From contig OZ004607.1 in assembly GCA_963924565.1 (NCBI GenBank), forward strand, positions 24,862,001-24,926,000: DNA of 64,000 nt. Direction: 5' to 3'. Of the stretch, positions 5,312-50,716 are shown piece after piece. The stretch's first letter is position 1; each line of letters opens with the position of its first letter. This DNA comes from Ascidiella aspersa. Taxonomy: Eukaryota. Made by a program: the position numbers and the translations under genes. The notes below the pieces were generated by a model. The model was not told where the DNA came from. It was given only the letters and a program-made list of their open reading frames with translations, and did not search any database.

Positions 5312-6292
5312 ATGCCAGAAGACGATACAAAACTGTTTGTTGGGGGCTTGTCATGGGCCACAACTGAAGAAAAAATGAAAAATTACTTCAGTCAATTTGG
5401 AACAGTCACTGAAACCAAGGTTATGAAAGATAAAGTTACGGAGCACTCTCGTGGCTTTGGGTTTGTAACCTTTTCTGATGCAAGTGGTGTTGCAGCTGTC
5501 CTTAAATCAAGACCTCATGTTCTGGATGACAAAACTATTGACCCGAAGCATTGCACACCTATGGAGGTGCAAAAAAAGAAGAAAGAAGAAGAAAAAATGC
5601 ATGTGAGAACCCATAAAATTTTTATTGGCGGACTTCCCAGGGATATTTCAGAAGCAGAAGTAAGAAAGTATTTTGTTAAGTTTGGTGAAGTGTCAGAAGT
5701 TACATTTGCCCTGAGTAAGGATGACAATCTAAACAAAGGATTTGGATTTGTAACCTTCTCTGAAGAATCCTCTGCCGCCATGGCGGTCAACCAACACTAC
5801 CATGAGATTTCAGGCAAAAGAGTTGAAGCCAAGAAAGCTGAACCAAGGGATACCAACCGTGTACCTAAACAACAGTCCCAACAACAACAGCCATATCAGC
5901 AGAATGATCAACAACAGTGGAACAACTATGGAGCTGGTGTACAGAACCAAAACAACCCTAACCAGGGTTATGGACAAATGAGTGGTTGGGGACAAGGTTA
6001 TGGTGCTATGGGCCCCTCAGGAGGTTATATGCCCAACAATAGTTACGGTTATGGGCAAATGTATTCTGGATATGGGAGTTATGGTTATGGCCAGCAATAC
6101 CCACAGCAAGGTGCACCCGTCCAAGGTGGATACCCAAACATGGGAACATATAACCAATATAACTCTTCCTATGGCCCTATGTACGGAGGCGATGCTTCAA
6201 AAGCGGCTGCTCCTGCTGCTGCTGCTGCTACTACTGGTAAAGATTCAAGCAATGGTGATAAATCTACTGGATATCATCCATACAAGAGATAA
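5312..6292 (+). CDS. DAZAP1: DAZAP1/Hrb27C (hrp48)-type hnRNP: two RRMs, Q/G/Y-rich low-complexity tail and C-terminal PY-NLS
   Basis: KLFVGGLSW and RGFGFVTF (RNP2/RNP1), SRPHVLDDKTIDPKHCTP, KIFIGGLP, KRVEAKKAEPRD and terminal YHPYKR closely match DAZAP1. Single 326-aa ORF; splice acceptor TTTTATTTTAG ends at 5245. Confidence 0.9.
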   Translation: MPEDDTKLFVGGLSWATTEEKMKNYFSQFGTVTETKVMKDKVTEHSRGFGFVTFSDASGVAAVLKSRPHVLDDKTIDPKHCTPMEVQKKKKEEEKMHVRTHKIFIGGLPRDISEAEVRKYFVKFGEVSEVTFALSKDDNLNKGFGFVTFSEESSAAMAVNQHYHEISGKRVEAKKAEPRDTNRVPKQQSQQQQPYQQNDQQQWNNYGAGVQNQNNPNQGYGQMSGWGQGYGAMGPSGGYMPNNSYGYGQMYSGYGSYGYGQQYPQQGAPVQGGYPNMGTYNQYNSSYGPMYGGDASKAAAPAAAAATTGKDSSNGDKSTGYHPYKR

Positions 6293-13635: not shown

Positions 13636-15510
13636 CAAATTTGAGAAAACCAGCAATTTCAAGACAAACATACTGCAAAATTTGCATACAATAAGCGACA
13701 TTAATCTCTTTTAAAAGCAACTTTATGATACATGCATTTTAAGAAACAATTTTCGGGCGAGAAACGTGTAATGTCGTTTTTAACGAGAAACGTGTACAGT
13801 CGTTTTCACTTTAAACAACCCTGGTTATCGCCATGGCCCATAATTTTGTCTTTGTCCAGTGAGGGCCGCAATTTTGTCTCTGTCTGGTGAGGGCCGCACA
13901 ACCTGGGGCAATGGGGCATGTTAAACACCTGGTCGAGGTCGTTTGGCGTAATGACCTGCTTCCAATCTGAAGCACCTTCGAAAGCGCCCGTAGACCTTCC
14001 GCAATGCACGCACAACAACGCAATTTCATTCTCAGAGTAAAAGGTGCAAAGCGTGATCCCGTTTCCTGCCTTTCGAATATCATCTGCTTTCACGCACTTT
14101 TGTATACCTTCGAATTGTCGGCCGTCTTCAACCCACCGTTCACTTGCCGCTTTCAAATCTCGCTGTACAACTGACCTTCCTCAGTCGAGCTCTTGTTGGT
14201 CACTTCCTCGTAAACCAAGCTTTCCAAACTACCCTTGCAATTTCTTGGCTGTTCATCACAATTTAAGCTGCGGATGCAAAGCCTCTGCGTATTGTAAATT
14301 TGTTTGGGAACTCTTGCCACAAAATGTGAAGTAGCTAACCTGGTCAAGTGCTTAATGCGTCATGCCCCCCAAAATCTAAATAAAACTTTACATTTTAAAA
14401 CAAAAATAGTCACAATTTTACGCGCTTCGCGCGACGTCTTGTGGCCTTCTTTAAATTTCACTTAAATTGCACATTTTCGCACAACTACAAACGTAATGAG
14501 GACGTTAGCTTATTTGTTTTATACCGTCATAGTATGACGTCATATTGCGTGTATTACAGATCCTGTTTTTGACCCAGCCCGCCACAACATTTTAACCTTC
14601 TCATGCGGCCCGCGGTTAAAAATAATTGCCCACCTCTGTACTATAGTATGATTAAAAGCAAGGTCAGTTGTTTTCATTTATCTCCAACTCGACGATATTT
14701 TGTTCGACTATACCAGGGACAGCCAACACGTCGATCGCGATCGACCGGTCGATCGCCACAATTCACCTGGTCTATCGCGTCGGATATGTGTTACGTCATT
14801 AGACTCATTACAGTAGCTGTCGCACCAACGCCTATCTATAACATTGGTCGCACACAAGTGGAACATTGTTGTCTCGCAGCTTAATAAAGCGTTCTTTGAC
14901 TCAATTTAGGATTAGGTAATTGGAACTTACAAGGGTCTATTTAACTTTTGTTATTAAACTGAAATACGTGCAAATTGAGGAAGCATCTTAGCACAAAGAC
15001 ACTGTGCGTATTAAGGCACATTATTAACCAGATCAACAATAAAAGTTTATCACGCTTCCTATTTTTATTACACATTTTTAGGGATACCACATTATCCAAG
15101 CTTTACATAGGCACACTTTTAAACAATCACCAGATCCAGCATTTTTTGTGGTCATTTAAGTTTGGCACCCGGAAAATACGTCATAGCGTGACATCACACA
15201 ACATGAAACTTGAAAAGGTCTGTTTTTGCCAGTCAATTTCCCGAGTAAATATGCAAAAAAGGGAATGAATTTATTCCGTTTTTTTTTACAACGATTTAGG
15301 AACCCGAACAAAGTATTTGTGAAATTATGCAATCGTCCCAATATACTTTTAGGTAGATAATGGGCTACTTTTTTTAACAAGTGTTTATTTATTTTTTTTT
15401 TTTCAAAACGTTACAGCCGAAAATCTTATCAGCATACTATTACTGTACTAGCTAATGCTCTAATAGAGTGGTTTTCACCTATAGGGTCCGTGGTCCCCTA
15501 GGTGTCTTAG

Positions 15511-16060
15511 GACTTCAGCCATAAGACCGAAATAAGAACAACATGCGTTTGAATAAACCACAGTTCGGAAGAAAACCAATATCGGCCCATTACCAAATAG
15601 TCGTTATAACGTCTAAATCGAAATAAGTCCTAAACCCGTCGAAATAAGACCTAAAATGACCAGAATCAGGCCTTCACAACATTTTACCTAACCCCAAACC
15701 AACCCCTAAGTACATCACTCACTACCCTAATAATTTCAACCCTTTCCTAATCCGACCCATTACCCATAAATAAACTTAAACAGGGTAAAAAAATCCGGTG
15801 CCAAAACAGCGGCGTATACTAACGGTGCCATTCAAATCAGAGCACCCAAACGTCGAAACCAAAACAGCCGATGTCAAACCCATGGACCCCGATCTTCCAT
15901 AACCTCTCCCTACAGTTTCAGGCCGTTATTTTGGCCATTTAGGAATTATTCCGATAAAATTAGAACTTAGTCCGAGTGGTTTATGCGTTATTCAAAAGCT
16001 TTCGATCTTATACTGTACTGTGGGTATTACTGGGTATTTGCCTTTATTATGTCGTTAGTC
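15511..16060 (+). repeat. Long copy of the interspersed repeat family (AATAAGNCCTAAA sub-repeats, CCCTAA-rich core)
   Basis: Begins GGACTTCAGCCATAAGACCGAAATAAGAACAACA; colinear in reverse with 53540-54989 and 23250-23562. Confidence 0.65.
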
Positions 16061-18433
16061 TTAATGCTATGGTTTTTTCGTTTTCGCGAAGCAGTTTTAT
16101 GGAGATAGCAAAGAAAATTCTAACAATGATCTTGTTTTTAATCGATGCTAAAAATAGAAAAATTACGCATTTATGCACCCATACGGGTAACAAATAGATA
16201 GCTGAAATGGTGGTATGATCTTCCACACAACTATACGAGCTCTAAAGCGAGTGTCAGAGATAATAGAGAAATGGGCAATAATTGCTTTAAGTTTTTTTTT
16301 TCTCCCTTTCCGACGATCAATACAATACACACGCACACTTAGTAAGTTAGTACCGTAAAGTTAGCGTATTAAGAGAAGAAACAGCCTTGAACCACAAGTG
16401 GTTCTGCAAAGAGACCCTTGTCACACGGACTATACATTTATTGTGAGTAACAGTCTCTAATACGTTCCTATTCAGTAGGTTTTATTGGGACAAAAATAAG
16501 AATAAATAGAACAAAGTGATAGTTTTGTTATACGCCACAAATGTCTATTTTGATACTTTATTTTAATGATACCGTTATTAAATTTCAGCTATATTTTGAG
16601 TTTACATTACTGCAATAGGTACCGAAGGCCTATATTCATTTTTCCACAAAAACCTAGCAATACAAACAGACACAAATTTAAAACGTGAGAAGGCTCCCAA
16701 AAGAAATGTGGTAAAAACATATTGCATGATAAAAATGAACGTCACAAATCCGACAGGTGACGAAATGTCACGTTTCCATTCTTAAAAAATAAATTTCTCG
16801 CTACTTTCCTAATTTACAGGGAACTTATCTTCGATTTATCCTCAATTTTTTTCAATAAAATTTACCCAAAGCGATAAAAACGATATTTATGTTTTTTAAA
16901 CGGGAAAAGAAATGATTTACTGGTGCTCCCAACTTGAGGCTGGTAGGACAGCTTCTAACCTTTAAAAGTATATGCAATCAAAATTTTTCTTCTAAATTCT
17001 CAATATAAGCTTGTGCAATGGGTAGAATCATATTTAAGGCGCAAAAGGGCAGCTGCGACTAAATAAGGATTGATAGTGTGATAAATGGGCGCGAGTAGGC
17101 AAATGTATTGTACACTTTTACACAAGTAATACTGTAATACTTTATCATGTATTGTATATCAGATTTTTAAAATGCTCAAAAGGAGGCCTAATACAAATAA
17201 AATAACGAAAAGTTTCTTCCTTTTACTGCCAAGCGTTCAATTACTTCTTATTTCGCTTCTTTACCTCATAATGCAAGAAGAAAATATTTTAATGTTGAAC
17301 TTCTCGCGAAACATTTGTAAAAAAAAAACTTATTGCGACTAACGCGCTTAATGTAGGCAACAGGCTGTTTAAGAGAAAAACAATTGTTGACTCATTTACG
17401 ATTAAAACTAAAGCACATTGATTTCTCTAAATTATATGGAGATCATATTAAAACTAAAATGTACCTAGTAGACCTACTTATAATGTCTGAACAATATTAT
17501 CACACTTTGGTTTGTAAACTATTAAAAACTTGACACACAAGCCTGTTAAACTGGAAGGCTCCCTTCAGAGCTTTGCTATTTCAATTTGAATTAGTGCGAA
17601 ATCCAGGATTTTCTATAAATCCATTCTATATTGTTTTGGGTTGGGTTGTTGCCAGGTCGTACCGAAGTCGTATGATTTTATCAACACCAAAAGTGACCTT
17701 TCACTGGCAAAATTCCTGTCTTAATTTTAGACCGAAACAATATACTTGAAAGCCGAAATGGATATTAGATTGACCGCAGGTTTGGCAAAGTTGTGCTGAG
17801 GTGGTATGACTTTATTTGATTGCACGGTTCACGAGCAACGTCGTGTGGTTGGCAGACTGATTATAAATGCATGCTCTTTTATACACGACGTCGCCTTTGC
17901 TATCTATCCGGTTTGAGATTTGCTTCTTACGTAGGCTGGTTTGACAAATTATTGATGACCCTAAAAAGCAGCAAACCTATCTGCAGCTAAATCAGGCTTA
18001 CTCGATCGCGCTTCTTCAATCAATTGAATTGATATATCAAGCCGGCTTATAGCGCCTTCCGTGACAGCGATAGGGAATGATGAGTTGCCGGGGATAGTCG
18101 ATCGATTTGCATTTTTTGCTTGAGATGAATTGAGTGCTCTCACCACAGTGTTTTGTTCTTTGCGTAAAATTAATTTCTCGTTTGCTGTCATGTTAAGCGG
18201 ACAACGATGCATCGGTCAAGCGGGATTAATCATTTAATATACGCCAGTTGTTGACGGAGTACTTTCATGAATTATTCTCTGTAGGCGCGTCACACGTGAA
18301 TCGATAAGCGCCAGAAAAATTTGGCTTACGGAAATGCAACTACTATATTTATACTTGATCAGGCTCCATCAGCATACAAATTGCTGTTTAACGACTAACG
18401 ACAGAGGCGACGCTGACGACTAAAATTCTTGCA

Positions 18434-18439
18434 TATAAA
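18434..18439 (+). promoter_or_regulatory. TATA box of the neuropeptide precursor gene
   Basis: GCATATAAAGGCGCG 116 bp upstream of the ATG at 18550, within a GC-richer island that also has CACGTG and CGTCA motifs near 18290. Confidence 0.5.
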
Positions 18440-18549
18440 GGCGCGTTGTTTTCAGTTGTATTCGGAAATTTGTTGCTAGCCTGAGTGCAACAAAAAAATA
18501 ATTGTTAAACATTATATATTTGTTAACAGAATTAATTCAATTTAAAAAA

Positions 18550-21500
18550 ATGGGACAAATGTTGTACTTGTTAAGTTATTTGTTAGTTTTGCATTTCGTG
18601 ACGGTTATTGTGAGTTCGAAATCAGGTACGTTTAAGCTACATTTGTAAAATCAGTATAAAGAATGAAGACATGTTTTTATTCCGATAAGATTGTTTTTAA
18701 CTTGTTATGCAATAGTTTAATGAAACTTTATATTTTGCAGTACCACAAAAAATGATAAACGGAAATCCAGAAAATACGGTAAAACTTCAAATTGCATTTT
18801 AGTTTGATTTAGGTCTGATTTTTAAACAAAAAAATAGCATAATCTTGTATACAATTTTATGCTTATCTTTTTGAGCCAGATCTATAAACTTGTAATGGTT
18901 GTGCATTTTAATTAACACTGGAAAAAAAACAAGATGTTTAGACAATAGAATGCATTGCTAAACCCTGTTTTATTTTTGTGAATTTTTACAATTTTGCAAA
19001 ATAACGCAAGGAATAAATCCCCCATAGGGCGTTGGAGATTCTGTCGTGTACAATCGGGAAGGAGAATATTATTACCCAAATATGTTCCCACAAGATAACA
19101 GCGATCAGGGCAGAATTTCTGATAGAGCCTCACGATATGGAAATGCTTTCATCCTAAAAAGAAAGTTTGACGATGTAAGTACTGTTCATACTACTTTAGA
19201 ATTAGTTTTATTAATATTATTTTTTTAATATTTTAATATTGTGTTTAATATTTTTGTTTTGTCGAAACACTGGGAAACGATCATATTTTTTCCTCGAAAC
19301 TAAAAACGTCAAGTTATTTACGAAAAATTTTGGAATAATTTAATTATATTTGTCGTCAGAAAGGTGCTACAAATTAATGAAGGATGAATTAATTATTTAT
19401 CATGTTTAAACGAGGACCGTTAAGGTCATCTAAAACGAAAGGAAATGTCGGCACCATTAGCGAAAGACGGTTGCATATTTTATAACATTTGTCCCAAACC
19501 TTATTAAAACATAAGTTTAGCCGACAGTTAAAAATAAAAATTAATGGATATGTAAGTGTCCATGTTCTTTCTGAAACCCGGTATTTTTTGTTTTACAGCC
19601 GTCCGTTTCGATGTCAAATTACATCATTAAAATAGAGAATGAGCAAATGATTTAAATTATGCATTTAATTTTCCAGATTGTTTAGCCAACATGTGCGTTA
19701 CCCAGGTTAAAATACCCAATGTAGATTTTGTGTGTGTGTTGGGTCGCAAGCCAAGCCAAACAACTCAATATTTTTGTCAGCTATACCAGTTTTATCTCCC
19801 TGCAAGGGAATCGTTTGGGCCTCTTTTGCAATCGTTAGGGCCTCTTTTTTATGAAAAAGTCTTATTCTATTGTACTTAGTTTTGCACTAAATTATACAGA
19901 TAAATTAAAGTCGTGCGTGAAGACAGCGTTGTATTTTTTCGAACTAAATGGTCTGTTTAAATCGTGATATGCGTGTAGCTTTCGTTTTTTCACAAAAATC
20001 TTAATTCACAACTTTTATATTTTGTTTTATCTGCTTTGTTACAAAAAAATTCCCGAAGCTTATTTATTGTTACGTAACTATCCCTGTTGTTTCCTACCAT
20101 TACGAACTTCAAAATACTGGTCTCATCAATTGCCAACAAGGAGCACAGTTGCTTTCAAGGGCGCACGACGCTGTGGGACAGCGGTCGTTAATTATGTCAA
20201 ATGATTGCTCTTGATAGATATTATCTACTGTTTTTTATCCACTGCTCCCCTAGGGGGCGCCAAGTAATTCTTAGGTGGGCCCAAGCTCTACTAAAATATT
20301 TAACTTTTTATATGATTTTATCAGTTCCATGTTGCGTTAGTTATTAAATCTGCTTGTATGCTGCCCTATGCATAACATCAAAATTACACTGTTTGGAAAA
20401 GTAACTGAAAAAAAAAAGATTCATAATTGTACGATTTGCAAACTTTAGGCTACTATGTTTTAATAGTTTCTCGCTTTTTTACAATATTTGTTACTTATTA
20501 TGGCCAATCGGGGCTGTGTTTAGTCACAATAGTATGATATGGTTGAAGAAGATCTAAGTTGTGCACCACGTCACCCTTTCCACAAACTGTGTTTTGTCTA
20601 TTTTAACAACAAAACTTCAAAAAAAATGTTGAGCTTCGCGCCAACTACGAAATACCTTTCTTGCGCATCACTTATTGGGAGAAACTCTTTTCGCGCCTAT
20701 TTGTAATGTTATTTGCAGTTAATAGCCTTTGGATTGTGTTCCATCATACTTTTTAAAACACGATTACCGCAATGTTTTATTTTTTCACAACATGTCTGTC
20801 AAAATCAGCTTGATGTAAACCAAATATATCGAGCACGAGCAACTTGTTTGTGTCTCCCAAATTAAAGTTTATAGCCAATAAAAACCAAATAATCGCAATT
20901 TTTTGTGTTCGTGCACCGAAGAGTTAACTTTTCTATTTTCATGCTGTCGGATTGATATGTACTGTATTAGAAAAATAACGAATTTGTTTTAGTATTATTG
21001 TTTAATATCTAAGGGGGCGCAAGGCACAGGACATTTATTAAAGGGGGGCGCGGTAGAAAAAAAAAAAACTAGATACGAGTCCATTTCAAATACTTTTTGA
21101 CTATTTAAAAAAAAAAAATTTTCCCGCTTTGCGAGAATCATCTTTCTACGTCCGACTTGTTTACGTTTTGATGCGGTCTTTTGAACTAGATCAGCGCTTC
21201 GTTACTGTTAATGGTAAACTTATTAAAAAATGTTGGAGATATATTTTTTAACATTTTGTATTGTCGGCAATGTAATAAAAACTTGCAAGAAATTTAAAAG
21301 AACTGCCGGTATATCTAAAAAATCGCGCTCGCTTCGCTCGCCACGTCCGCCCTCACTTAAAAAGGTTAACAAATACTGATTAACTATTAAAGTTATCGCG
21401 TTACATAAATAAAGCACCATACAAAATTAAAGCGTGTCCAGTATGTTTACTATTCGTATTTGGTGGATCATCATTTTGTCAGGTTTGGCCATGATGGATC

Positions 21501-22615
21501 ATGGCAGAAATCATTTGAACACCCCTGATATAGAACCATCGAAAATTAGCCACAATAGTAATTTCTCACCTTTGTGATAATAACGGATACAGTATCTTAA
21601 ATTCAATACTCAATTTTCCGGACAACATAATCATTTAAACCTTTCAAATCCCGCAGGCAAAATAACAAAAACTGCATCGCCTTCAGTTTATTGATTTGCC
21701 TTTGCAGCTCTTCCGATTGCTTCACCCGACATTTGAAGGCACGAACGAACAGCAAATGACCGACCACGCTTCGACAGCAAACAAGAGGTTCGGCGTCCCT
21801 TCCGTTATCAAACGTTTTAGCGTTCCGTCAATAATAAAGCGATTCGGCGTTCCCTCGATCCTAAAGCGCTTTGGGGGCCCTTCCATTATCAAACGGCAGT
21901 TTCAACACTCTTCGATTTTTCGACCGCGTTTTTTTAATCCATCCATCATCAAACGCTACGACCAAAAGGTTGGCTGTTTTTTTGATGTTTAAAGTTATGA
22001 ACAAAGGTAGTTTATATTTCGATAATCTGAAGATCAATTATGTCTTCGGGTAACAAATGATCGATCGTTTGGGTTAAATGTTAACGAAACATATATTGTC
22101 GTTTTGTAAACTGTGTGGCAAGTTTGATGCTTTGAAATACCTAAAGTCCAACGTCAAGTAAATTGTAAACCAACTGTTAGAAAGCAAAACGCTTTGTAAT
22201 GGAAGAACAGAGGACGGGTTAATTAAATAGCGAGAAACTCATTGATTTTTGAAAATCAATTACAACCAATTAACATGTCTATTCCCCGTAACTTTTAGTA
22301 ACCTATATCTCTTAACGTAATAAATTTTGGCAAAAAATATTTGACGAATTTTGAGCAAAAATATACCTGTCCTAAATGATATATCACTATATTTTTTGGT
22401 TAGAGTAAGGTTATTTTACAATGATTGAAATCAACGAAGTCTAATCAAACTTGTGTAGTACTGGTATAGTGTTTTTTTAATAGTAGGTAGATAAACCTTT
22501 TTGAAAATTAGTCACACGTATGCGAACATATTTTAGTGTTTAAAAAAATTATACATTTCAGTCAGAAGAGGGTGATTCGCGGATGAACGATCAACCATAT
22601 CTCACCGATGAGTAG
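18550..22615 (+). CDS. Secreted neuropeptide precursor, neurotensin-like peptide (NTLP) type, 191 aa, 5 exons
   Basis: Exons 18550-18625, 18741-18778, 19028-19174, 21708-21968, 22562-22615 (GT-AG; phases 1,0,0,0; 576 nt total). Signal peptide MGQMLYLLSYLLVLHFVTVIVSS. KR-flanked FGVPSVI, FSVPSII, FGVPSIL, FGGPSII and QFQHSSIFRPRFFNPSII. AATAAA at 22880. Confidence 0.85.
20245..21065 (+). mobile_element. Degenerate hAT MITE related to 53988-54783, in precursor intron 3
   Basis: Shared blocks CACGATTACCGCAATGTTT, GTCAAAATCAGCTTGAT, GAGCACGAGCAACTTGTT and AAAGGGGGGCGCGG; termini eroded. Confidence 0.5.
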
Positions 22616-23249
22616 GGAAAGATTAATGAATCCGCGGATCAAATTCACTTCATCGATTGCAATCGCACAATATTTACTTTTGTGATTTGTCTGTATATAG
22701 CAATCTTGTTTTAAATGTTCCTTTTAAAAAGCAATGTTAAAACAAACATGATTATTCTTTATCGATCAAATCTAATTATTCCGTAATCGTTTCGCGAACA
22801 AAACCTTTTTATAGGTGTTTATTCAAATGATCTAATGTAGGGAAACAGTGGTCTCACAATGATCTCGTATTGCAGCTTAAATAAACTATTTTATTGCTGT
22901 TATCGTTAATGTTGCTTCTTTTATCTCGAGTGCTAAATATTTTGTCAGTTACGCCGATTTTAATAAATGTGAGGTATATCTAACGGAAATATCGTGTTTT
23001 ATTGAAACAAATCTGATTTGTATAGGTATTTCAACAAATACTGTTGCAAAACGTTCTTTTTATATTAACTCTGTGTATGGTAACATTGCAACCACCTTTC
23101 CATTTTTTTTGTATTTATTGAGACCGAATGATTCATTTTTCATTTTGGTGAGTTTTGTTAAATCTTTGTAAATATATAATAGACTAAACATAACAATCTT
23201 CGGATTTGAAGTTATGTGGAGTAAACCCACCGCATGCCAACTTTATAGC

Positions 23250-23562
23250 TTTAGTAAAGCGGCTTTTTAAAGAATCTACAGATAGAGCTTTCCAGGGAAC
23301 ACACAATAAGATCTAAAAAGCAACAATAGCTAAAGCAGAAAAATCTACAAAACAATAGTATTAAGATCAACGACATAATAAAGCCAAACATGCAGTAAAA
23401 TACAGTACAGAATAAGATCGAAATCGTCTGATCAGGCCCAAACCTGCCGGAATACGTCCTAAATTCATCGGAATAAGGCATGAATGGCCAATATTTTGGT
23501 CTTATTCTGTGTTTTAATCCGACTTTGTTGTTGTTCTTATCTCAGTCTTATGACTGGAGTCC
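23250..23562 (-). repeat. Internally deleted copy of the interspersed repeat family
   Basis: Matches 53520-53690 (AATAGTATTAAGATCAACGACA...CCTAAATTCATCGGAATAAGGC) and ends TTGTTCTTATCTCAGTCTTATGACTGGAGTCC. Confidence 0.65.
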
Positions 23563-24872
23563 CTTTCCAGATGTCATTAAACAACTATTAGAATTGAATT
23601 TTCCAACCGTGTAAGTACCAGTTAGCACTTCGTTTTTCGATCACCTTGTTTCCTTGGTTGTTTAACAATGTCAAGTAAATACGCCATAATGTCCTCAAGT
23701 TATTTATTGTATTGTAGTAAAACCCTTTCTATACAAAACATTTAAGTCGAACAGCACGAACACTGAGGTTATACAAACAATGCTTGTTCTAATATTTGGG
23801 AATGGTGGATAGGAGTAGCGCTTGTTTTGCCAAAATAAGGTTGCTGTTAATTCACGTTGTCGCATTCACGTCCTTTCGTACGATGAAACGTAACTTTGTA
23901 AAACATGAAACATATTAAACTTGCTGCTTATTCACTTATTAAAAAGGCACGTCATTCGGGGTCATAACTAAATTCGTGTTTGGACTTGAACGAATTGAAT
24001 AATATGTTGCGCCGGTCGATAAGTCATTAAGCTTTTACTGAAGTATGTTATTTCACCTATAGTGTCTTGCCATCCTACCTATAACTGGACTCGTTGTGCG
24101 TAGGCTATTAATTAATCTTTTCCTAGCCTGAAAATCCTAAAAACATAATAATTGTATAAAATAATAAGGAAATTTAACACAAACATTATTTCCCGCACAA
24201 CAAAAGTAAACCGTAATTAACAACAGTTAAACGTGATGTTCTCAAACTATTGAGCTACAAGCACAAAAATAGGCTTTTTAAGAATTAATCGACAGATTTT
24301 GCGATCAACGTTTCAACTTGATTTTTTTTTAATTATTGTATATGATTAGCAAAATTCTATAGATTTAAAGGTTTAAAAAAATTTGTAGTCTATTCCTACA
24401 CGAAACGAATTTAGGCTAAATACCTCTCGATCGGCATTTCAGCTTATTTTTTGTATATTTTTAAAAGATATCCAAAAAAGTAGGCAGAATCAGTTATCGT
24501 GAAAACCACGTGCAACGGCGATAATTGTGTTTTCCGTAAATCCAATTGATGGGGTGTCTTCCATTGGCAACGCTTGATTTAGCTTTGAGTTGAACGTTGG
24601 CGTTCCGAACTCCAAGCGAATGCTTTGATGATTCTATAAACTGTCTCGTGACGTCATTTCCAAACCGATCGTTTCTCCAAAAGCTGGCGCCTTGCAGGGC
24701 CAAAACAACACCGCAATTCAAAAGAAAGTCTATTATGGACCAATTAGACGTCTGTTGACCAACCGGAGGTTTCGTTCTCGTAAGGTTGACGACAACGAGT
24801 GTTGGAATTGTAGTCGTAGCAGATGATACAAGGAAGTAGTAATTATGACAAATCTTAACCTTTTTTAAACAG

Positions 24873-25150
24873 TGTTGCACTGAATATGTTAAAAATGGAA
24901 ATCACCTTGACCCTTGCAAGATAAATGTCGACCATAATTCCTGATCAGTAACAGCAAAATAATCTAGCAAAGCTAGCAATTCAGGTCAGACACATTAACC
25001 AGATCTTAAAAGATATATATATATTTCGCCAACTAAGGCATCGTCAGTATATCTTAATTCATTCGAAGGTTGGCGAAATATATATATATCTTTTAAGATC
25101 TGGTTAATGTGTCTGACCTGAATTGCTAGCTTTGCTAGATTATTTTGCTG
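24873..25150 (-). mobile_element. Penelope-like element (pLTR) remnant with a perfect 82-bp inverted repeat
   Basis: Arms 24952-25033 and 25069-25150 with a 35-nt loop; 14-bp TSD CCTTTTTTAAACAG at 24859-24872 and 25151-25164; contains a minimal hammerhead. Confidence 0.7.
25010..25055 (-). ncRNA. Minimal type I hammerhead ribozyme
   Basis: Minus strand reads AAGAUAUA-CUGACGA-U-GCC(UUAGUU)GGC-GAA-AUAUAU-A^UAUAUCUU: 8-bp stem I, intact core, 3-bp stem II, palindromic loopless stem III. Confidence 0.75.
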
Positions 25151-25359
25151 CCTTTTTTAAACAGGTTTGAGACAATTGCCGAAATAACTCGTTGAAAGTA
25201 CTGCGAAAATAACCAAAAGGATAAATCGCACAACAGATGATCTTCAATTCTTCTTCCCCCCTATATGGTATTCCACATAAACGTGGTTTAATCCTTTATT
25301 TACGCCTAACAGTAGCGCAAAAATTTAATGATTGAACTCTGGTGTTCGAGAAACGCTTT

Positions 25360-27189
25360 AGGGTTAGTAGCCAATGTCGCATATACGGGCGTTTATGTCG
25401 CATATACGGGCGACTGTAGGTCGCATATACGGGCGAAGATGTCGCATATACGGGCGACTGTAGGTCGCATATACGGGCGTTCGCATATACGGGCGAAGTT
25501 CTCTGCCAAAAGTACTGTGTGGTGTAAGGCGTCGGAATGGCGTTCTATCAGACTTTAGTTGGCCATTATGAAGTGTTTGTGTTGCCCGACAGTTATGACG
25601 TCATACCATGTCTTTATGTGGTTTTAATAATCTACATACTGCATGTGAGTATACTATTATTATTGCAATATCGTTGCCTTCTTTTAAGGAATCCGCGGTA
25701 TTTCACGTTTTACAGTATTTTTTTATGAGCCTAATTGATTTCTTTAAATGAAAGATTATACGATTTCGCTGCCAAATTTTTGATTAGCTTGCTCTATATG
25801 GAAATTCACCACGGAAACACAGCCATATTTTATGACGGTCATCTAACCGACAGGATATTAAGCAAATTGGTAAACACATTACCGAAACAGTAATCGAATG
25901 TATGATGTAACAAAATAACCTTATATAAACCGTTTTCTTATTTCATAGTATTTATCCAATACCGCACAAATGTATTTTGGGTGTGTTAATTGGCAGCTGA
26001 TATATCTTTTAGCAAGAATCGCTAGGAGTGTCAGCATAACAAAACATCTATCCACGACCCCGTACATCCGATGTGCAACAGGGGGCTCAAAACTACTAAG
26101 GAGTCTGTGCTGCCCAAAATCAGCCCAAAACAATTGAACAGAAAGGCTATATCAATGCATTGCTGTTTGCCTTCAGGATAGTGAATCAAAATCCTACGGA
26201 ATTTTCGCCATGAATTGCACTTATGTTGCTTTCGACGGAAAACAACAAGCTACTTCTGCAATTGAAACGGCCATTCCGGTTGAATGACCAGATTGACATC
26301 AACTACTACGATTTCGGACGATGAATCAAACATTCCATGCCAACAGAATCAAACATTCCAAGCCAACATGTTAAATAAAATGCGTCTCTGGTCGTTGAAA
26401 CCTCGGTGGGATACGATGAGTAGACGCCCCGCTAAACTTCGCAGGAGGTCGCAGGCAATGGCAGCACTTGTCGACAGGTTTTCTGATATTTTCGGCGAAT
26501 CTCCGTGAGACGTTGACTTTATCAAGCACCGCATTATGCCGACGGATTTTTGGTTCTGTTTGGGGTGATTGTTTGGTAATGGGTGGGGTTAAAAAATAGG
26601 TTAGTGTTGAAATTATTAGGGGAGTTAGTGCAGCATCATGCGACTGCAACGTATATGCGACCTATAGTGGTTAACAAGTCAGCCGAATAAGGGTAATTTA
26701 CTACAGCACTTGATTAATGTAACGTCATGATGAAGACATGATATGACGTCATAACTGTCGGGCAACACAAACACTTCATAATGGCCAACTAAAATCTGAT
26801 AGAACGCCATTCCGACGCCTTACACCACACAGTACTTTTGGCAGAGAAATTCGCCAGTATATGCGACATTATGCGAACGCCCGTATATGCGACCTAGCCA
26901 AATATGAGCTATTTACTACAGCACTTGATGAGTGTGACGTCACGATGAAGACATGATATGACGTCATAACTGTCGGGCAACACAAACACTTTATAATGGC
27001 AAAGTAAAATCTAATAGAACGCCATTCCGACGCCTTACACCACACAGTACTTTTGGCAGAGAACTTCGCCCGTATATGCGACATTATGCGATCGCCCGTA
27101 TATGCGACATCTTCGTCCGTATATGCGACCTACAGTCGCCCGTATATGTGACATAAACGCCCGTATATGCGACATCGGCTGCCAACCCC
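25360..27189. mobile_element. Fold-back-type non-autonomous DNA transposon with long TIRs built from (G)TCGCATATACGGGC sub-repeats
   Basis: About 250-bp TIRs (25360-25615 vs 26945-27189), six motif copies on the left and five on the right, plus an internal duplicate of the right TIR at about 26695-26890. No clean TSD. Confidence 0.75.
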
Positions 27190-27782: not shown

Positions 27783-28265
27783 ATGGGTGGTTGGTTTTCA
27801 TCACAAACACATGCTTGTGTGTTTTGTGACATTTTAAGCTCATTAAATGATGGACCTGCTAATGATATTGCATTGCAGCCTATGTCAGACAAGATATTGA
27901 AGTTCAACGAAAACTTAGCTGTTTTGAAAGATAAAAGACCAGCCGCAACCCATCACTATCTTGTAGTACCTCGAAGTCATATTTCAAATCCGAAAACGTT
28001 ACACAACTTACAGCATGCCAAGTTAATTGAGGATATGCATCAGTTTGGAAAATCCTACATTGAAGAAAACGTTCAAGTCGATCCTAGCAAAGAAGTTCGT
28101 TACGGCTTTCACTGGCCACCTTTGATTAGTGTGGACCACTTGCATATGCATATTATATATCCCTGTTCTGAATGTAACTTCCTAAACTCCCAGTTGTTTA
28201 AACATAACTCTTCATTTTTTCTCAGTCCTGAAAGGCTAATCAACATTATAAAACTTAAGTCTTAA
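27783..28265 (+). CDS. HINT3: HINT3-like histidine triad nucleotide-binding protein, paralog A
   Basis: CVFCDI, KDKRPAATHHYLVVPRSHI and YGFHWPPLISVDHLHMHII (HIT motif HxHxH); single exon, 160 aa. Confidence 0.85.
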   Translation: MGGWFSSQTHACVFCDILSSLNDGPANDIALQPMSDKILKFNENLAVLKDKRPAATHHYLVVPRSHISNPKTLHNLQHAKLIEDMHQFGKSYIEENVQVDPSKEVRYGFHWPPLISVDHLHMHIIYPCSECNFLNSQLFKHNSSFFLSPERLINIIKLKS

Positions 28266-28623: not shown

Positions 28624-29085
28624 ATGGCTGAATTTACACAAAAACTATCAACTGCTTGTTTGTTTTGTCAAATTTCTTCTGGAATCAATGAAAATCGGTG
28701 TCAGAATGTGTTGACTTTCAATGAAACAATGTATGTGATCAAAGACCTTAAACCTGCTTCCACCCACCACTACCTCACTATACCTCGCAGCCATGTCACT
28801 AATCCCCAAACTCTTTGCAAACATTCCGATATTACATTAATACAGAAAATGGTGAAGTTTGCAAAAGAATATTTAAAATCTGTTGAACCCCAGTACAGTG
28901 ACAATGATGCTAGAATTGGCTTTCATATCCCTCCTTACACAAGTCAAGAGCATTTGCACCTCCATATTATATGGCCAGCTTCTCTAATACATAGCAGAAA
29001 ATATCAAGAAGGTTATTGGTACTTTGTAGACCCACAAACTGTTACTGAAATGGTAACAAAAAAAATAAAAAAGGAACAGGGATGA
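28624..29085 (+). CDS. HINT3: HINT3-like histidine triad protein, paralog B
   Basis: CLFCQI, KDLKPASTHHYLTIPRSHV and IGFHIPPYTSQEHLHLHII; single exon, 153 aa; acceptor-like GTTTTAG at 28590. Confidence 0.85.
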   Translation: MAEFTQKLSTACLFCQISSGINENRCQNVLTFNETMYVIKDLKPASTHHYLTIPRSHVTNPQTLCKHSDITLIQKMVKFAKEYLKSVEPQYSDNDARIGFHIPPYTSQEHLHLHIIWPASLIHSRKYQEGYWYFVDPQTVTEMVTKKIKKEQG

Positions 29086-36042: not shown

Positions 36043-38179
36043 TTATTTTTCGGTTTCGTTGACGTTATTTATTGGCTCCTTTGCCCCACTGCTACTGTCT
36101 TCTTGAGGAGTTGAGGAGTTTGCTCTTAATCTATTGTTGGCCGCCTCCCGTCTCGTCTGAGCCATGGTCAGAATCAGTCGCGTGGTGTTGTTCGCCCTAG
36201 CTCCGTTTCCGGATGTGGCAGTCGTCTGGGCGTGTTTACGCTTGCTAAATTTTCTAAAAACAGCAGAAACACGATTAAGGCAAACCGCACCCTATAGTTG
36301 AATTAAACCATAGCCCTTTAGCGGGTTCACCATTACACCGGCGGCAACAAGTAACACTTGGGTATATAAATAAAAAACTTGAAAGTTCTATATTTTTGTA
36401 TTTTTATTTGCTACTGACAGCGTGTAAGACATCAGTTCCTTAAACGATTTGAAAGTTTTTTAACTACAATTTTATTATTTTTACCGTGTTGCGGGGATAT
36501 TTGTTGTTTGTAAAGTTTGTCTGATCCATATCTTACTTTATTGTCAAAAAGGCCGAAAATTAAAATAATGAAAAGGCTTGCCCCGACTTAAGAACAAAAT
36601 ATGAAATTAAACCAACCAAAGAAAGCCATAAAGAATATACGATTGACGTTTACCTGGCGCAAAGCGGCAAGATCATGTTGGGCCAATCTCGGAATGACAT
36701 GATTATGCAAATGATGTTGATTAGGAGATTAATGTCAAATATAGCGAGATAGACAAGCTCCGGTACGATGATGAGCATTTGTACCACGGTGAAGACCACA
36801 TCCGACAGCACGCAGATGAGAGTCAGAATAAATGCTTTTCGAATAAACAGAATCACCCGGCGCCCTTGTTGCGTTTTGTTTCTGCGAATTTTATTGTAAG
36901 ATATTATTTATTTGTGCGACCTTTTCAAAAAAATGTTTAGTTAAAAAGTTCAACAGTTAAACACAGCATTTTTTGTGACGCATATTGAATATTTCAATAG
37001 AATATGCGATCAGCACAGCTTTAAAAACAACGAAACTTAAAAAAACGTATTTTTCAACGTTGTTACCTACACCAATTGAAAGCTCATGGCTGGTACAATT
37101 AAATTAGCAAGTATGTCGGTAGTTTCGCTTAACGTTTACCTCTTAACCTTCTTTCCATCGGATACAGTTGATACTGTGCTGGATGTTCTACTCCGTCCCT
37201 TTTCCGCTAAATTGGTGCCGATTTTCTTCAAGGCACTTGGCTTTTCTTTAGGACTTGTGTTCGCCGTCGCTTCGCCGCCCTTCTTGTAGAAGACAAACGG
37301 CGCCCTAAAAAATCTCGTCTTCGACTTGTAACAAGGATATTCATTCGTTTGTTGATCGGCGTGTGATCCCTGTTGGGCAGTTGGAAGGGCCTCAGGTTCT
37401 TCGCATTGAGCGTGGCCATTCGTGTATGTTTCCGAGACCGACTCGCGGCGGTCGTTGGGCGAAGATGCATTTGCAGACCGATAACGCTGCGTCTTCTTAG
37501 TGAGCAATGGGTAGACGAAAAGCGCCAGCAGACTGAGTTGAAACGAAACCGTGAAGCATACAACCAGAGTTGGCACAAGATCGAACCCAGAGCTGGTAGC
37601 GATGTCGCGACAGCCCTCAGGCGAAGCGCGGTAGTCCCAGCCAGTCATCTGTGGAATGACGTATATAACTGTGAGCACAGCGCCTCCGCTTAACATGATG
37701 AAGAGTGTTGCCCAACTGATGAAGGTCACGACTGGATTGAGCACATGAGAGAGAACCGGGTTGGCGTAAAATATACTTTGTCGCAACCAGAGGAAAATAT
37801 AAATCGGGTAGAGGCTCAGCGAATAGAAAACAGTGCTGACTGACACAGAAATAATGCAATTGTCGTCACTCTGCCAGCCTGTAATGGCCACTGCTTGGTC
37901 GGCTGCAAACCTACAAACTGCCATAGAAACGCTGACCAGACACATGCGGTAGAGCATTTTGCCCTTTTTGCCTCCGATTTCACGTCCTGGCTTGCAACGG
38001 GTAATCGTCGCGTACCGGGCAAGGCATATCAGCAGGTAAATGGCAAAGACGGTGACGAAGCATATCACAGATTCTGCAAAGATCCAATAGATGTCCATGT
38101 AGGGGTCTTCGGGAAGTTGTACTAAAACGGTGATTGTTTCCCCGGTCGACATGACACCAGAACTACGGTTTGCCGACAT
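36043..38179 (-). CDS. Orphan seven-transmembrane (GPCR-like) receptor with a long third intracellular loop, 3 coding exons
   Basis: Exons 38179-37140, 36881-36654, 36253-36043, in phase. Five hydrophobic helices in exon 1 and two in exon 2; N-terminal NRS sequon; Cys at the top of TM3 and in ECL2; FLWLRQ in place of DRY; S/T- and basic-rich ICL3 and C-tail. Confidence 0.75.
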
Positions 38180-49900: not shown

Positions 49901-50092
49901 TCCGTTTGCTGCAACGAGTTCCAGCTTTCTTTTACAACTGTTGCGATCCATTCTTGTGGCAGGAACAACACTAATCGCAGCACCGGAGTCCACGAGGTAC
50001 CTTTGTCCAGTGGTGCGGTCATTAACGTGAAGAAGGCGGCGAGAACAACCAGCGGCACTAGCCGCCATTAGTGGCTGGTTGAGGCGTTTCCC
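46951..50092 (-). pseudogene. Gypsy pol (protease, RT, RNase H, integrase); open through the integrase core, with frameshifts near 47570 and 47315
   Basis: [29 protein letters not shown]...RELLA, HX4H...CX2[23 protein letters not shown]; C-terminal integrase pieces lie in other frames (47314-47532, 46951-47262). Confidence 0.9.
50035..50092 (-). promoter_or_regulatory. Programmed -1 ribosomal frameshift signal (slippery heptamer plus pseudoknot)
   Basis: G_GGA_AAC at 50092-50086 in the gag frame, pol in the -1 frame, followed by a stem-loop whose loop GGCGGC complements downstream GCCGCC. Confidence 0.7.
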
Positions 50093-50716
50093 TTGTACTC
50101 GCAGGGAGAAACGCACTTTTGTGCTTTAGGACCGAATCGCCTGTGGTACCAGCACAGTCGAGCGTCGTGCAGGTTTCTTGTTTGCGGCGTATTGCGCTTC
50201 AGAATTGCAATTTCTTTTTGCAGTTGATTGACTTGGGCCAAAATGGGTGACGTGTCCATCAGGTCAATCATGTTGTCGGCTTTCTGCGCCAAAGCTGATA
50301 ATTCCAGATCAAGTGTGGCCAAAACTACTCGCAAATTGCCTGGTAATCGTTGAAGAAAAAGTTCGCGAAGCAAATTTTTCGAATCTTCTTCGCCCATAAG
50401 ATGTTGCATTTACATTTCTGAAGGCTTGTGATCGCCGAGGTCTTCATGTCGAAGAAGTTTCTGTAAGCGTTGGTGCTTGGTCATCGAAACCCTGCGGATG
50501 AGTGCACATTTTAACTGCGCGTAAGGATCCGCGTCATCTGGGTTTTTTATAATGTCCCGCACAACGGCGGCGATTTCGGGTGACACTGCTGCTACCACAT
50601 GATGGTACTTTGTTTTCGATAGTGTCACGCCTTTCACACTGAATTGTGCTTCTACTTGTAAAAACCATAGTTCGGCGTCTTGTGGCCAGAATGGCGGAAT
50701 TTTAACAGCAACGGCT
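50068..50716 (-). pseudogene. Gypsy gag, start deleted and interrupted by a stop at about 50410
   Basis: AVAVKIPPFWPQDAELWFLQVEAQF...LGDHKPSEM*...LFLQRLP...[18 protein letters not shown]. Confidence 0.85.

What the first reader, a model, noticed from the sequence alone, without database searches (positions are those of the whole stretch)
18550..22615. Hidden five-exon neuropeptide precursor encoding an array of neurotensin-like heptapeptides
Seen: splicing five small exons gives MGQMLYLLSYLLVLHFVTVIVSSKSVPQKMINGNPENTGVGDSVVYNREGEYYYPNMFPQDNSDQGRISDRASRYGNAFILKRKFDDLFRLLHPTFEGTNEQQMTDHASTANKR-FGVPSVI-KR-FSVPSII-KR-FGVPSIL-KR-FGGPSII-KR-QFQHSSIFRPRFFNPSII-KR-YDQKSEEGDSRMNDQPYLTDE. The 27-nt repeats use different synonymous codons (KR as AAGAGG, AAACGT, AAGCGA, AAGCGC, AAACGG, AAACGC), so the peptides are conserved rather than the DNA. 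There is no C-terminal Gly, so the products should be free acids. Knowledge (recalled): Ciona neurotensin-like peptides end in -PSIL/-PSII/-PSVI/-PGIL, and vertebrate neurotensin/neuromedin N end in -PYIL between KR sites. Inference: this is an NTLP-family precursor with a uniform F-x-x-P-S-(I/V)-(I/L) repertoire that may be undescribed for this species.
Basis: partly seen in the sequence, partly recalled or inferred. Interest (0 to 1): 0.85.

Follow-up and report, generated by a model that had tools for sequence, protein, structure and literature searches.

The report
Sea-squirt neurotensin-like peptide precursor gene
This stretch holds a small, single-copy gene for a secreted precursor that would be cut into five or six near-identical short peptides; it is the counterpart, in another sea squirt, of the Ciona "neurotensin-like peptide 1-4" gene, a family so far described only in Ciona, but RNA proof of expression is still missing.

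Summary
Five GT..AG exons (18550-18625, 18741-18778, 19028-19174, 21708-21968, 22562-22615, + strand) join in frame to 191 codons plus TAG. Exon 4 encodes KR-flanked FGVPSVI, FSVPSII, FGVPSIL, FGGPSII and QFQHSSIFRPRFFNPSII.

- **Selection:** the 27-nt units differ at almost every synonymous site (pS 0.91) but rarely change the peptide (pN 0.15). TRF finds no DNA repeat.
- **Homology:** of 1.8 billion representative proteins, the only convincing relative is Ciona intestinalis LOC108949269 (E 6.5e-9). It shares a 90% cluster with NP_001233161.1, "neurotensin-like peptide 1-4 precursor". The two arrays align unit by unit, six units each.
- **Copy number:** the Ciona protein matches only this exon in the 308.6-Mb genome, and the exon has no paralogue.
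- **Host:** an ascidian that is not Ciona.

Weak points:
- The one RNA run laid (6% read, tissue unknown) gave no read on any exon.
- Exons 2, 3 and 5 rest on sequence logic alone.
- No Pfam family matches, the vertebrate neurotensin family included.

Verdict: a real, probably functional NTLP-A orthologue. It is a new member of a known kind and of moderate interest, because it extends a "Ciona-specific" family beyond Ciona. Another agent reported a GnRH-X-like precursor elsewhere in this genome; this locus was not reported before.

The parts
18434..18439 (+). TATAAA, candidate TATA box 116 nt upstream of the ATG
   Evidence: sequence only, function inferred
18550..18625 (+). Exon 1: ATG plus signal-peptide-like MGQMLYLLSYLLVLHFVTVIVSSKS; ends in phase 1; donor CAG|gtacgt
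   Evidence: It is the only signal-peptide-like first exon with a usable donor outside the repeat tract in 14000-21700; the other such exon lies inside the repeats and ends in an incompatible phase. Hydropathy peak 2.57. The region is single copy.
18741..18778 (+). Exon 2 (38 nt, restores phase 0): (V)PQKMINGNPENT. Predicted only.
   Evidence: acceptor ttttgcag, donor ACG|gtaaaa; 102 other open phase-restoring segments exist by chance, 4 with fair splice scores, so this exon needs RNA proof.
19028..19174 (+). Exon 3 (147 nt, phase 0 to 0): spacer GVGDS...ILKRKFDD with one KRK site. Predicted only; could be skipped without breaking the frame.
   Evidence: a stop codon lies immediately upstream in frame, inside the acceptor; donor GAT|gtaagt. 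GC 0.41 against 0.27-0.34 in the flanking introns. Single copy. No similarity to the Ciona precursor.
19994..21533 (.). High-copy interspersed repeats inside intron 3 (19175-21707)
   Evidence: summed contig depth reaches about 3e5 against about 50-100 in the flanks. All RNA reads laid on the stretch fall here.
21708..21968 (+). Exon 4: spacer LFRLLHPTFEGTNEQQMTDHASTAN plus the whole peptide array; homologous to residues 72-182 of the Ciona NTLP 1-4 precursor
   Evidence: acceptor ctttgcag; donor AAG|gttggc (weak)
21789..21809 (+). Peptide 1, FGVPSVI, between KR sites; aligns with Ciona QLHVPSIL
21816..21836 (+). Peptide 2, FSVPSII, between KR sites; aligns with Ciona FSMPSVI
21843..21863 (+). 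Peptide 3, FGVPSIL, between KR sites; aligns with Ciona GMMGPSII
21870..21890 (+). Peptide 4, FGGPSII, between KR sites; aligns with Ciona MMLGPGIL (Ci-NTLP-2)
21897..21950 (+). Peptide 5, QFQHSSIFRPRFFNPSII. It is a decayed fifth unit (QFQHSSIF, dibasic site lost to RP) fused to the sixth unit (R)FFNPSII. The two parts align with Ciona FGMIPSII-KK and RFMGPSII.
22562..22615 (+). Exon 5: acidic tail SEEGDSRMNDQPYLTDE plus TAG. Predicted only. Without this splice the frame ends at 21990-21992 (…YDQKVGCFFDV*).
   Evidence: acceptor catttcag
22880..22885 (+). AATAAA, candidate polyadenylation signal 265 nt after the stop; a second one lies at 22962
   Evidence: AATAAA at 22319 and ATTAAA at 22222 would serve the unspliced alternative.

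Best explanation
The locus is the single-copy orthologue, in a non-Ciona ascidian, of the Ciona 'neurotensin-like peptide 1-4' (NTLP-A) precursor gene.

Proposed mechanism (inferred from the anatomy and from what is established for Ciona NTLPs and for prohormone processing in general):
1. The 191-aa prepropeptide enters the secretory pathway through its N-terminal signal peptide.
2. Prohormone convertases cut at the six Lys-Arg sites of exon 4, and a carboxypeptidase E-type enzyme trims the basic residues.
3. No Gly precedes the KR sites, so the products are free-acid peptides: FGVPSVI, FSVPSII, FGVPSIL, FGGPSII and (p)QFQHSSIFRPRFFNPSII. The last may be cut again after R-P-R to give FFNPSII.
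4. These peptides would be released from neurons and act on GPCRs of the tunicate-specific type shown to bind Ci-NTLP-2.

Shown here: the open spliceable frame, the peptide array, selection on the peptides, homology to and collinearity with the Ciona precursor, and single-copy status. Inferred: transcription, the exact splicing of exons 2, 3 and 5, processing, and receptor action.
For: - **Gene model:** in-frame GT..AG model of 576 nt.
- **Signal exon:** apart from a repeat-embedded one that ends in an incompatible phase, exon 1 is the only signal-peptide-like first exon with a usable donor in 14000-21700.
- **Expression signals:** TATAAA at -116, a good ATG context, and AATAAA 265 nt after the stop.
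- **Selection:** pS 0.91 against pN 0.15 among the units, with no DNA-level tandem repeat.
- **Homology:** phmmer of exon 4 against 1.84e9 representatives gives P0003 at E 6.5e-9. The other hits read in full, and all others by motif scan, are unrelated perfect-repeat ORFs or lack the motif.
- **Identity of the hit:** P0003 is XP_078481572.1, in the same 90% cluster as NP_001233161.1 'neurotensin-like peptide 1-4 precursor [Ciona intestinalis]'. It contains MMLGPGIL, which is the published Ci-NTLP-2 (PMC6475428).
- **Collinearity:** pairwise BLASTP gives E 1e-12 over exon 4 residues 1-83 against Ciona 72-182. MAFFT shows six units in the same order, the same pre-array spacer start (LFRLL / LYLLEE), similar total length (191 against 194-195 aa) and an acidic tail in both.
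- **Uniqueness:** reciprocal and unique in the genome.
- **Host:** an ascidian. A neighbouring gene's best named hit is Phallusia mammillata at 49% identity.
Against: - RNA run X4 of the same species gave zero reads on all five exons, while the repeats in intron 3 were covered (about 7.8 million records, 6% of the run, tissue unknown).
- No indexed run that holds the sequence is on record as RNA.
- Exons 2 and 3 have no homology support, and chance alternatives exist.
- The exon 4 donor is weak.
- The similarity to Ciona rests largely on a short repeated motif, which inflates E-values.
- Profile and word-based searches found no third family member to anchor the family.
- No signal-peptide predictor was available.
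Confidence: 0.8

Rival explanations
1. Same gene and same peptide exon, but a different transcript structure. Exon 2 could be replaced by another phase-restoring exon, exon 3 could be skipped or alternative, or intron 4 could be retained so that the protein ends …YDQKVGCFFDV. This rival concerns the model, not the identity.
For: Between exon 1 and exon 4 there are 102 open phase-restoring AG..GT segments, 4 of them with fair crude splice scores. Exon 3 is phase 0 to 0 and dispensable for the frame. The exon 4 donor AAG|gttggc is weak. AATAAA at 22319 and ATTAAA at 22222 follow the read-through stop at 21992. No RNA reads are available to decide.
Against: Their GC content is above that of the flanking introns. 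Exon 3 opens exactly at its acceptor. The spliced tail is acidic like the Ciona tail, whereas the read-through tail is hydrophobic.
Confidence: 0.3
2. A silent relic: an NTLP-like gene that is no longer transcribed or translated in this species.
For: Zero reads on the exons in the RNA run laid, and no indexed RNA holder.
Against: The frame is intact across five exons and all splice sites are canonical. Amino-acid conservation among units is strong despite saturated synonymous change. It is the only copy in the genome. Only 6% of one run of unknown tissue was read, and a gene expressed in few neurons can easily be missed.
Confidence: 0.07
3. A convergent, unrelated multi-copy peptide precursor. 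It would resemble Ciona NTLP-A only because both carry short hydrophobic P-S-I-I type repeats between KR sites.
For: Similarity outside the repeated motif is weak. The N-terminal spacer and the tail do not align. Repeat-containing queries draw spurious hits.
Against: The unit-by-unit order is collinear, including FSVPSII/FSMPSVI as the second unit and RF(F/M)xPSIIKR as the last. The pre-array spacer start is shared. Length and array position are the same. The match is unique in both directions. The host is a tunicate, like Ciona.
Confidence: 0.06
4. A true member of the vertebrate neurotensin/neuromedin N family, that is, descended from the same ancestral chordate gene.
For: Both have a C-terminal P-x-I-L type ending, free-acid C-termini, and KR-flanked peptides near the C-terminal end of a short precursor (sequence, and general knowledge of proneurotensin).
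Against: No Pfam family, Pro-NT_NN included, matches exon 4, exon 3 or the Ciona precursor even at E up to 10. No vertebrate protein appears among the phmmer hits. The published Ci-NTLP-2 receptor is unrelated to neurotensin receptors, and the authors class NTLPs as sharing no motif with other peptides (PMC6475428).
Confidence: 0.08

Closest known systems
Ciona intestinalis/robusta neurotensin-like peptide 1-4 precursor (NTLP-A; NP_001233161.1, FAA00713.1, LOC108949269)
   Same: - A secreted precursor of about 190 aa: signal peptide, non-conserved spacer, then a C-terminal array of six units.
- Units end in P-(S/G)-(I/V)-(I/L) with no amidation Gly, lie between dibasic sites, and are followed by a short acidic tail.
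- The units align one to one, with 44-45% identity over exon 4.
- Single copy.
   Different: - The peptides here are uniform heptapeptides starting with Phe (F-[GS]-[VG]-P-S-[IV]-[IL]). Ciona's named peptides are octapeptides with varied N-termini (for example MMLGPGIL).
- Ciona has a 25-residue insertion (IGPGPSFG…RNHR) between units 3 and 4 that is absent here.
- Here the fifth unit has decayed (P to S, and the dibasic site is lost) and is fused to the sixth.
- The N-terminal spacer and the tail are unalignable.
- Expression, processing and receptor are known for Ciona and unknown here.
Ciona NTLP-B precursor (Ci-NTLP-5 and -6)
   Same: Same named peptide family. By recollection of Kawada et al. 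2011, not verified with a tool, NTLP-5 ends in -PSVI like peptide 1 here. Ci-NTLP-6 has a shown role in counteracting tachykinin-driven follicle growth (PMC12441681).
   Different: It gives only two, longer peptides per precursor. No second NTLP-like array exists in this genome by the two-unit pattern, which would not detect a B-type gene.
Vertebrate proneurotensin/neuromedin N (Pfam Pro-NT_NN)
   Same: Free-acid peptides with a hydrophobic P-x-I-L type C-terminus, excised at KR sites from the C-terminal part of a small precursor.
   Different: There is no profile or sequence match. The basic R-R-P-Y core is absent. There are five or six tandem copies instead of two. The Ciona receptor for NTLP-2 is not a neurotensin receptor.

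Membership tests
Ascidian NTLP-A (Ciona neurotensin-like peptide 1-4 precursor) family | N-terminal signal peptide on a small precursor of about 190 aa | tested here: met
   The first 25 residues have a 17-residue hydrophobic core followed by S-S-K-S. This was judged by hydropathy and inspection only; no SignalP-type tool was available.
Ascidian NTLP-A (Ciona neurotensin-like peptide 1-4 precursor) family | Tandem short peptides ending P-(S/G)-(I/V)-(I/L), without a C-terminal Gly, flanked by dibasic cleavage sites | tested here: met
   Four KR-flanked heptapeptides and a fifth product ending -PSII-KR. The Ciona precursor shows the same endings.
Ascidian NTLP-A (Ciona neurotensin-like peptide 1-4 precursor) family | Significant, collinear sequence similarity to the Ciona NTLP 1-4 precursor | tested here: met
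   E 6.5e-9 against 1.84e9 proteins. BLASTP E 1e-12. Six units aligned in order. Cluster identity with NP_001233161.1.
Ascidian NTLP-A (Ciona neurotensin-like peptide 1-4 precursor) family | One-to-one relationship (reciprocal unique match) | tested here: met
   The Ciona protein hits only this exon in the 308.6-Mb genome. Exon 4 has no other match in its own genome.
Ascidian NTLP-A (Ciona neurotensin-like peptide 1-4 precursor) family | Transcribed and spliced; expressed in neurons of the cerebral ganglion | tested here: inconclusive
   Zero reads on the exons in the single RNA run laid (6% of the run, tissue unknown). No RNA holder in the index.
Ascidian NTLP-A (Ciona neurotensin-like peptide 1-4 precursor) family | Shared intron positions and synteny with Ciona LOC108949269 | not testable with these tools
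No other tool reaches Ciona genomic DNA.
Ascidian NTLP-A (Ciona neurotensin-like peptide 1-4 precursor) family | Mature peptides detectable and active on an NTLP-type GPCR | not testable with these tools
   This needs peptidomics and receptor assays. Ci-NTLP-2 with Ci-NTLP-2-R has EC50 11 nM in Ciona (PMC6475428).
Vertebrate neurotensin/neuromedin N precursor (Pfam Pro-NT_NN) | Match to the family profile | tested here: not met
   No Pfam family at E up to 10 for exon 4, exon 3 or the Ciona precursor.
Vertebrate neurotensin/neuromedin N precursor (Pfam Pro-NT_NN) | Active core with a basic pair followed by P-Y-I-L | tested here: not met
   The units read F-x-x-P-S-(I/V)-(I/L). Ser replaces Tyr and there is no internal basic pair.
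Vertebrate neurotensin/neuromedin N precursor (Pfam Pro-NT_NN) | Signals through a class A neurotensin receptor | not testable with these tools
   In Ciona the NTLP-2 receptor is unrelated to known peptide GPCRs (PMC6475428).

The most novel reading that the evidence does not exclude
NTLP-A is not Ciona-specific but an old ascidian neuropeptide gene with a conserved six-unit layout. Its conserved positions are the second unit (FSVPSII here, FSMPSVI in Ciona) and the last unit (RF(F/M)xPSII), neither of which, by my recollection of the original peptidomics paper, is among the named Ci-NTLP-1 to -4. These may mark the ancestral ligands. In the boldest version the family shares ancestry with vertebrate neurotensin/neuromedin N. 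The probability given is for that boldest version; the 'old ascidian gene' part alone I put at about 0.7.
Probability: 0.1. Interest if true: 0.6.

Novelty: new member of a known kind. Interest (0 to 1): 0.38.

Why it matters
Ciona NTLPs are treated in the literature as Ciona-specific peptides with no relatives (PMC6475428). In the 5.8-billion and 1.8-billion protein collections searched here, the Ciona precursor had no relative at all.

- A clear, collinear orthologue in a different ascidian with a much larger genome shows that the family predates Ciona.
- It gives a second sequence from which to read what is conserved: Phe at position 1, the P-S-(I/V)-(I/L) free-acid end, the six-unit order, and the second and last units.
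- It supplies concrete peptides and masses for peptidomics and for receptor de-orphanisation in another species.
- It does not settle whether the family is related to vertebrate neurotensin.

Tried and rejected
**Searches and checks that gave nothing**
- **RNA support:** the run search listed one RNA run of the species. Laying it gave reads only on intron-3 repeats.
- **More family members:** a word-indexed search with the Ciona precursor and with a profile of Ciona plus exon 4 returned only the Ciona cluster.
- **Other phmmer hits:**
  - P0001 (LQIPSYIKR x11, from a 2.6-kb ENA contig) is made of perfect repeats and lacks a signal peptide. Its status is unresolved.
  - P0022 (YFDPIMY x10) is a different precursor, not a relative.
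  - The other hits read in full are perfect-repeat ORFs. None of the rest carries the KR-flanked P-[SG]-[IVY]-[ILV] motif.
- **Pfam:** nothing on exons 3 and 4 or on the Ciona protein.
- **Rfam:** nothing at gathering score in 17500-26000.
- **Repeats in intron 3:** nothing notable.
- **Literature:** no held paper contains the five peptide strings. None describes NTLPs outside Ciona.
- **Ciona isoform P0147:** it differs only by an N-terminal extension, so it says nothing about intron positions.

**Idea considered and dropped**
- The multi-pass membrane ORF at 37136-38179 as a cognate receptor. It has no 7TM Pfam match, only about five hydrophobic segments, and only a weak Atlas lead.

All searches were made exon by exon, by reference.
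- A single-unit pattern search for an NTLP-B-type gene was not run, because about 100 chance hits were expected.
Full report
**What is there**

- Exons 18550-18625, 18741-18778, 19028-19174, 21708-21968 and 22562-22615 on the + strand are bounded by canonical sites. All four introns are GT..AG.
- The exons follow each other in phases 1/0/0/0. A Val codon is split G|TA between exons 1 and 2.
- They add up to 576 nt, which is 191 codons plus TAG.
- Exon 4 carries the whole peptide array: ...ANKR-FGVPSVI-KR-FSVPSII-KR-FGVPSIL-KR-FGGPSII-KR-QFQHSSIFRPRFFNPSII-KR-YDQK.

Every search was made exon by exon, by reference.

**Is it more than chance?**

- The five 27-nt units are 59-81% identical in DNA. 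Pooled over pairs, the proportion of synonymous differences is 0.91 and of non-synonymous differences 0.15.
- Tandem Repeats Finder sees no DNA repeat there. The peptides are held constant while the DNA has drifted to saturation, which is the signature of selection on the translated product.
- A degenerate DNA pattern for two successive P-S-[IV]-[IL]-K-R units occurs in the whole 308.6-Mb genome only at this locus, as three overlapping hits. The reversed-pattern control gave one isolated hit per strand.
- Exon 4, exon 3 and the 800 bp around exons 1-3 are single copy.

**Gene anatomy around the array**

- Exon 4 has no usable ATG or signal sequence of its own, so an upstream first exon is required.
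- I scanned 14000-21700 for ATG-initiated hydrophobic segments ending at a plausible donor.
- Two others scored. One lies inside the high-copy repeats of intron 3 and ends in an incompatible phase. The other lies 2.4 kb further upstream and is not signal-like.
- Exon 1 has a strong ATG context (AAAAAAATGG) and a TATAAA 116 nt upstream. AATAAA lies 265 nt after the stop.
- Exon 1 ends in phase 1 and exon 4 starts in phase 0, so at least one phase-restoring exon is needed.
- However, 102 other open AG..GT segments would also restore the phase, 4 of them with fair crude splice scores.
- Exon 3 is phase-neutral. It opens exactly at its acceptor, is richer in GC than the flanking introns, and has no homology support.
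- The exon 4 donor (AAG|gttggc) is weak. Without that splice the frame ends 8 codons later, at 21992, with polyadenylation-like signals at 22222 and 22319.
- The spliced tail is acidic, like the Ciona tail, which mildly favours exon 5.
- I therefore hold exons 1 and 4 as well supported, and exons 2, 3 and 5 as a reasonable but unproven model.

**RNA evidence**

- The run search found two DNA runs of the same organism holding about 0.8 of the words. It also found a low-coverage third run with identical sequence, and one 2026 RNA-seq run of the same species.
- I laid all four on 18300-22900. The RNA run (7.8 million records, about 6% of the run) put no read on any exon. All its reads fall on the interspersed repeats in intron 3, at 19994-21533, whose DNA depth is up to thousands of times that of the flanks.
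- The tissue of that run is not known to me. Earlier notes on this genome report that RNA reads do cover other genes (s1-788682), so the run type is informative in general.
- For a gene expected in a few neurons, the blank is weak evidence against broad expression and says little about neural expression.

**What it is related to**

- phmmer of the 87 residues of exon 4 against 1.84 billion representative proteins gave 25 hits at E up to 0.001.
- I read 13 of them in full and scanned all 25 for the motif. Apart from one unresolved hit, the ones read in full are unrelated ORFs made of perfect tandem repeats, and none of the others carries the KR-flanked motif.
- P0001, a repeat ORF with LQIPSYI units and no signal peptide, is left unresolved.
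- The exception is P0003 (195 aa, E 6.5e-9). It contains QLHVPSIL, FSMPSVI, GMMGPSII, MMLGPGIL, FGMIPSII and RFMGPSII between dibasic sites.
- P0003 is XP_078481572.1, Ciona intestinalis LOC108949269. It sits in the same 90% cluster as NP_001233161.1 / FAA00713.1, 'neurotensin-like peptide 1-4 precursor [Ciona intestinalis]'.
- MMLGPGIL is the published Ci-NTLP-2 (PMC6475428).
- Pairwise BLASTP of exon 4 against P0003 gives E 1e-12 over exon 4 residues 1-83 and Ciona residues 72-182.

The MAFFT alignment is collinear, unit by unit:

| This window | Ciona |
|---|---|
| LFRLL… (spacer start) | LYLLEE… |
| FGVPSVI | QLHVPSIL |
| FSVPSII | FSMPSVI |
| FGVPSIL | GMMGPSII |
| FGGPSII | MMLGPGIL |
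| QFQHSSIF-RP | FGMIPSII-KK |
| RFFNPSII-KR | RFMGPSII-KR |

- The odd 18-mer in this window is therefore a decayed fifth unit that lost its Pro and its dibasic site, fused to the sixth unit.
- Ciona has a 25-residue insertion before its fourth unit that is absent here.
- Overall length (191 against 194-195 aa), position of the array and an acidic tail also agree. The N-terminal spacer and the tail do not align.
- In the reverse direction, the Ciona protein finds exactly one place in this genome, which is exon 4.

**The host**

- The genome has 308.6 Mb in 75 contigs, and the window lies at 24.86 Mb of contig 1.
- A neighbouring intron-less 2xRRM gene (5312-6292) has Phallusia mammillata as its best named relative, at 49% identity over its full length. 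Other ascidians (Ciona savignyi, Halocynthia, Clavelina, Botryllus) appear among the hits.
- Neither that protein nor the NTLP exon has an identical or near-identical entry in the protein collections. This genome is therefore not represented there, and it is neither C. intestinalis/robusta nor C. savignyi.
- Another agent's note on this genome also calls it a sea squirt (s1-801565).

**How it most likely works**

1. By analogy with Ciona NTLPs and standard prohormone processing (established knowledge), the prepropeptide is imported into the ER through its signal peptide.
2. It is cut at the KR sites by PC1/PC2-type convertases and trimmed by a carboxypeptidase E-type enzyme.
3. This yields non-amidated peptides, because no Gly precedes the KR sites.
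4. In Ciona, NTLP-A peptides are found in cerebral-ganglion neurons (PMC12441681). Ci-NTLP-2 activates a tunicate-specific GPCR at 11 nM (PMC6475428). I infer the same kind of neuronal signalling here.
5. Whether the 18-mer is cut again after R-P-R to release FFNPSII is open. I did not settle whether the R-P-R context is a usable convertase site.

**Relation to vertebrate neurotensin**

- The name is historical. No Pfam family, the proneurotensin family included, matches exon 4, exon 3 or the Ciona precursor at E up to 10.
- No vertebrate protein appears among the hits.
- The units lack the basic-pair-P-Y core.
- The Ciona authors themselves class NTLPs as sharing no motif with other peptides, and their receptor as unrelated to known peptide GPCRs.
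- I therefore file the gene under the ascidian NTLP-A family, not under the neurotensin family.

**Novelty and verdict**

- None of the five peptide strings appears in the held literature. No held paper describes NTLPs outside Ciona.
- Searches with the Ciona precursor, and with a profile of Ciona plus exon 4, found no other family member among 5.8 billion proteins.
- The finding is therefore a genuine new member of a known kind. It extends a family labelled Ciona-specific to another ascidian lineage and shows which features are conserved.
- It is not surprising to a specialist, because the PNAS authors' trees imply tunicate relatives of the NTLP-2 receptor. Expression remains to be shown.
- Interest 0.38. 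Confidence in the identification 0.8. Confidence in the exact five-exon structure is about 0.55.

Noticed in passing
window 37136-38179 (-): An intron-less 347-aa ORF with about five hydrophobic membrane-span-like segments and a long hydrophilic, Ser/Lys-rich tail. It has no Pfam match. The nearest ESM Atlas clusters are chordate hypothetical proteins and a 'serpentine receptor class gamma' cluster at 0.89-0.90, which is a weak lead. It lies 15 kb downstream of the NTLP gene; nothing links the two.
   Followed up: partly
window 19994-21533 (intron 3 of the NTLP gene): A composite of very high-copy interspersed repeats. Summed DNA contig depth reaches about 3e5 against about 50-100 in the flanks, and the repeats are transcribed on both strands in the RNA run. 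No Rfam family was found, and there are no long inverted repeats.
   Followed up: partly
window 27783-28265 and 28624-29085 (+): A tandem pair of intron-less HIT-superfamily ORFs of 160 and 153 aa. Both match DcpS_C/HIT, E 2e-24 and 6e-23.
   Followed up: no
window 5312-6292 (+): An intron-less 326-aa protein with two RRM domains and a Gly/Tyr/Gln-rich tail, of hnRNP A/B, DAZAP1 or Musashi type. The best named relative is Phallusia mammillata at 49% identity. An intron-less copy of a normally multi-exon gene class might be a retrogene.
   Followed up: partly
window 47357-50116 (-), with 50068-50409 (-): A long open 919-aa ORF that reads, by eye, like a retrotransposon pol (protease, reverse transcriptase, integrase), preceded by a gag-like ORF. 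The local GC content is raised to 0.43-0.45. It was not analysed further.
   Followed up: no
protein P0001 (ENA contig of 2.6 kb, not in the window): A 174-aa ORF with eleven near-perfect LQIPSYI-KR units was the top phmmer hit (E 3e-17). It has no signal peptide and its source organism is unknown. It may be a satellite artefact or another NTLP-like array.
   Followed up: partly
window 24859-25164: Another first-stage note on this window reports a minimal hammerhead ribozyme in a fold-back insertion here (s1-802017). Rfam at gathering threshold over 17500-26000 gave no match. I did not examine it further.
   Followed up: no
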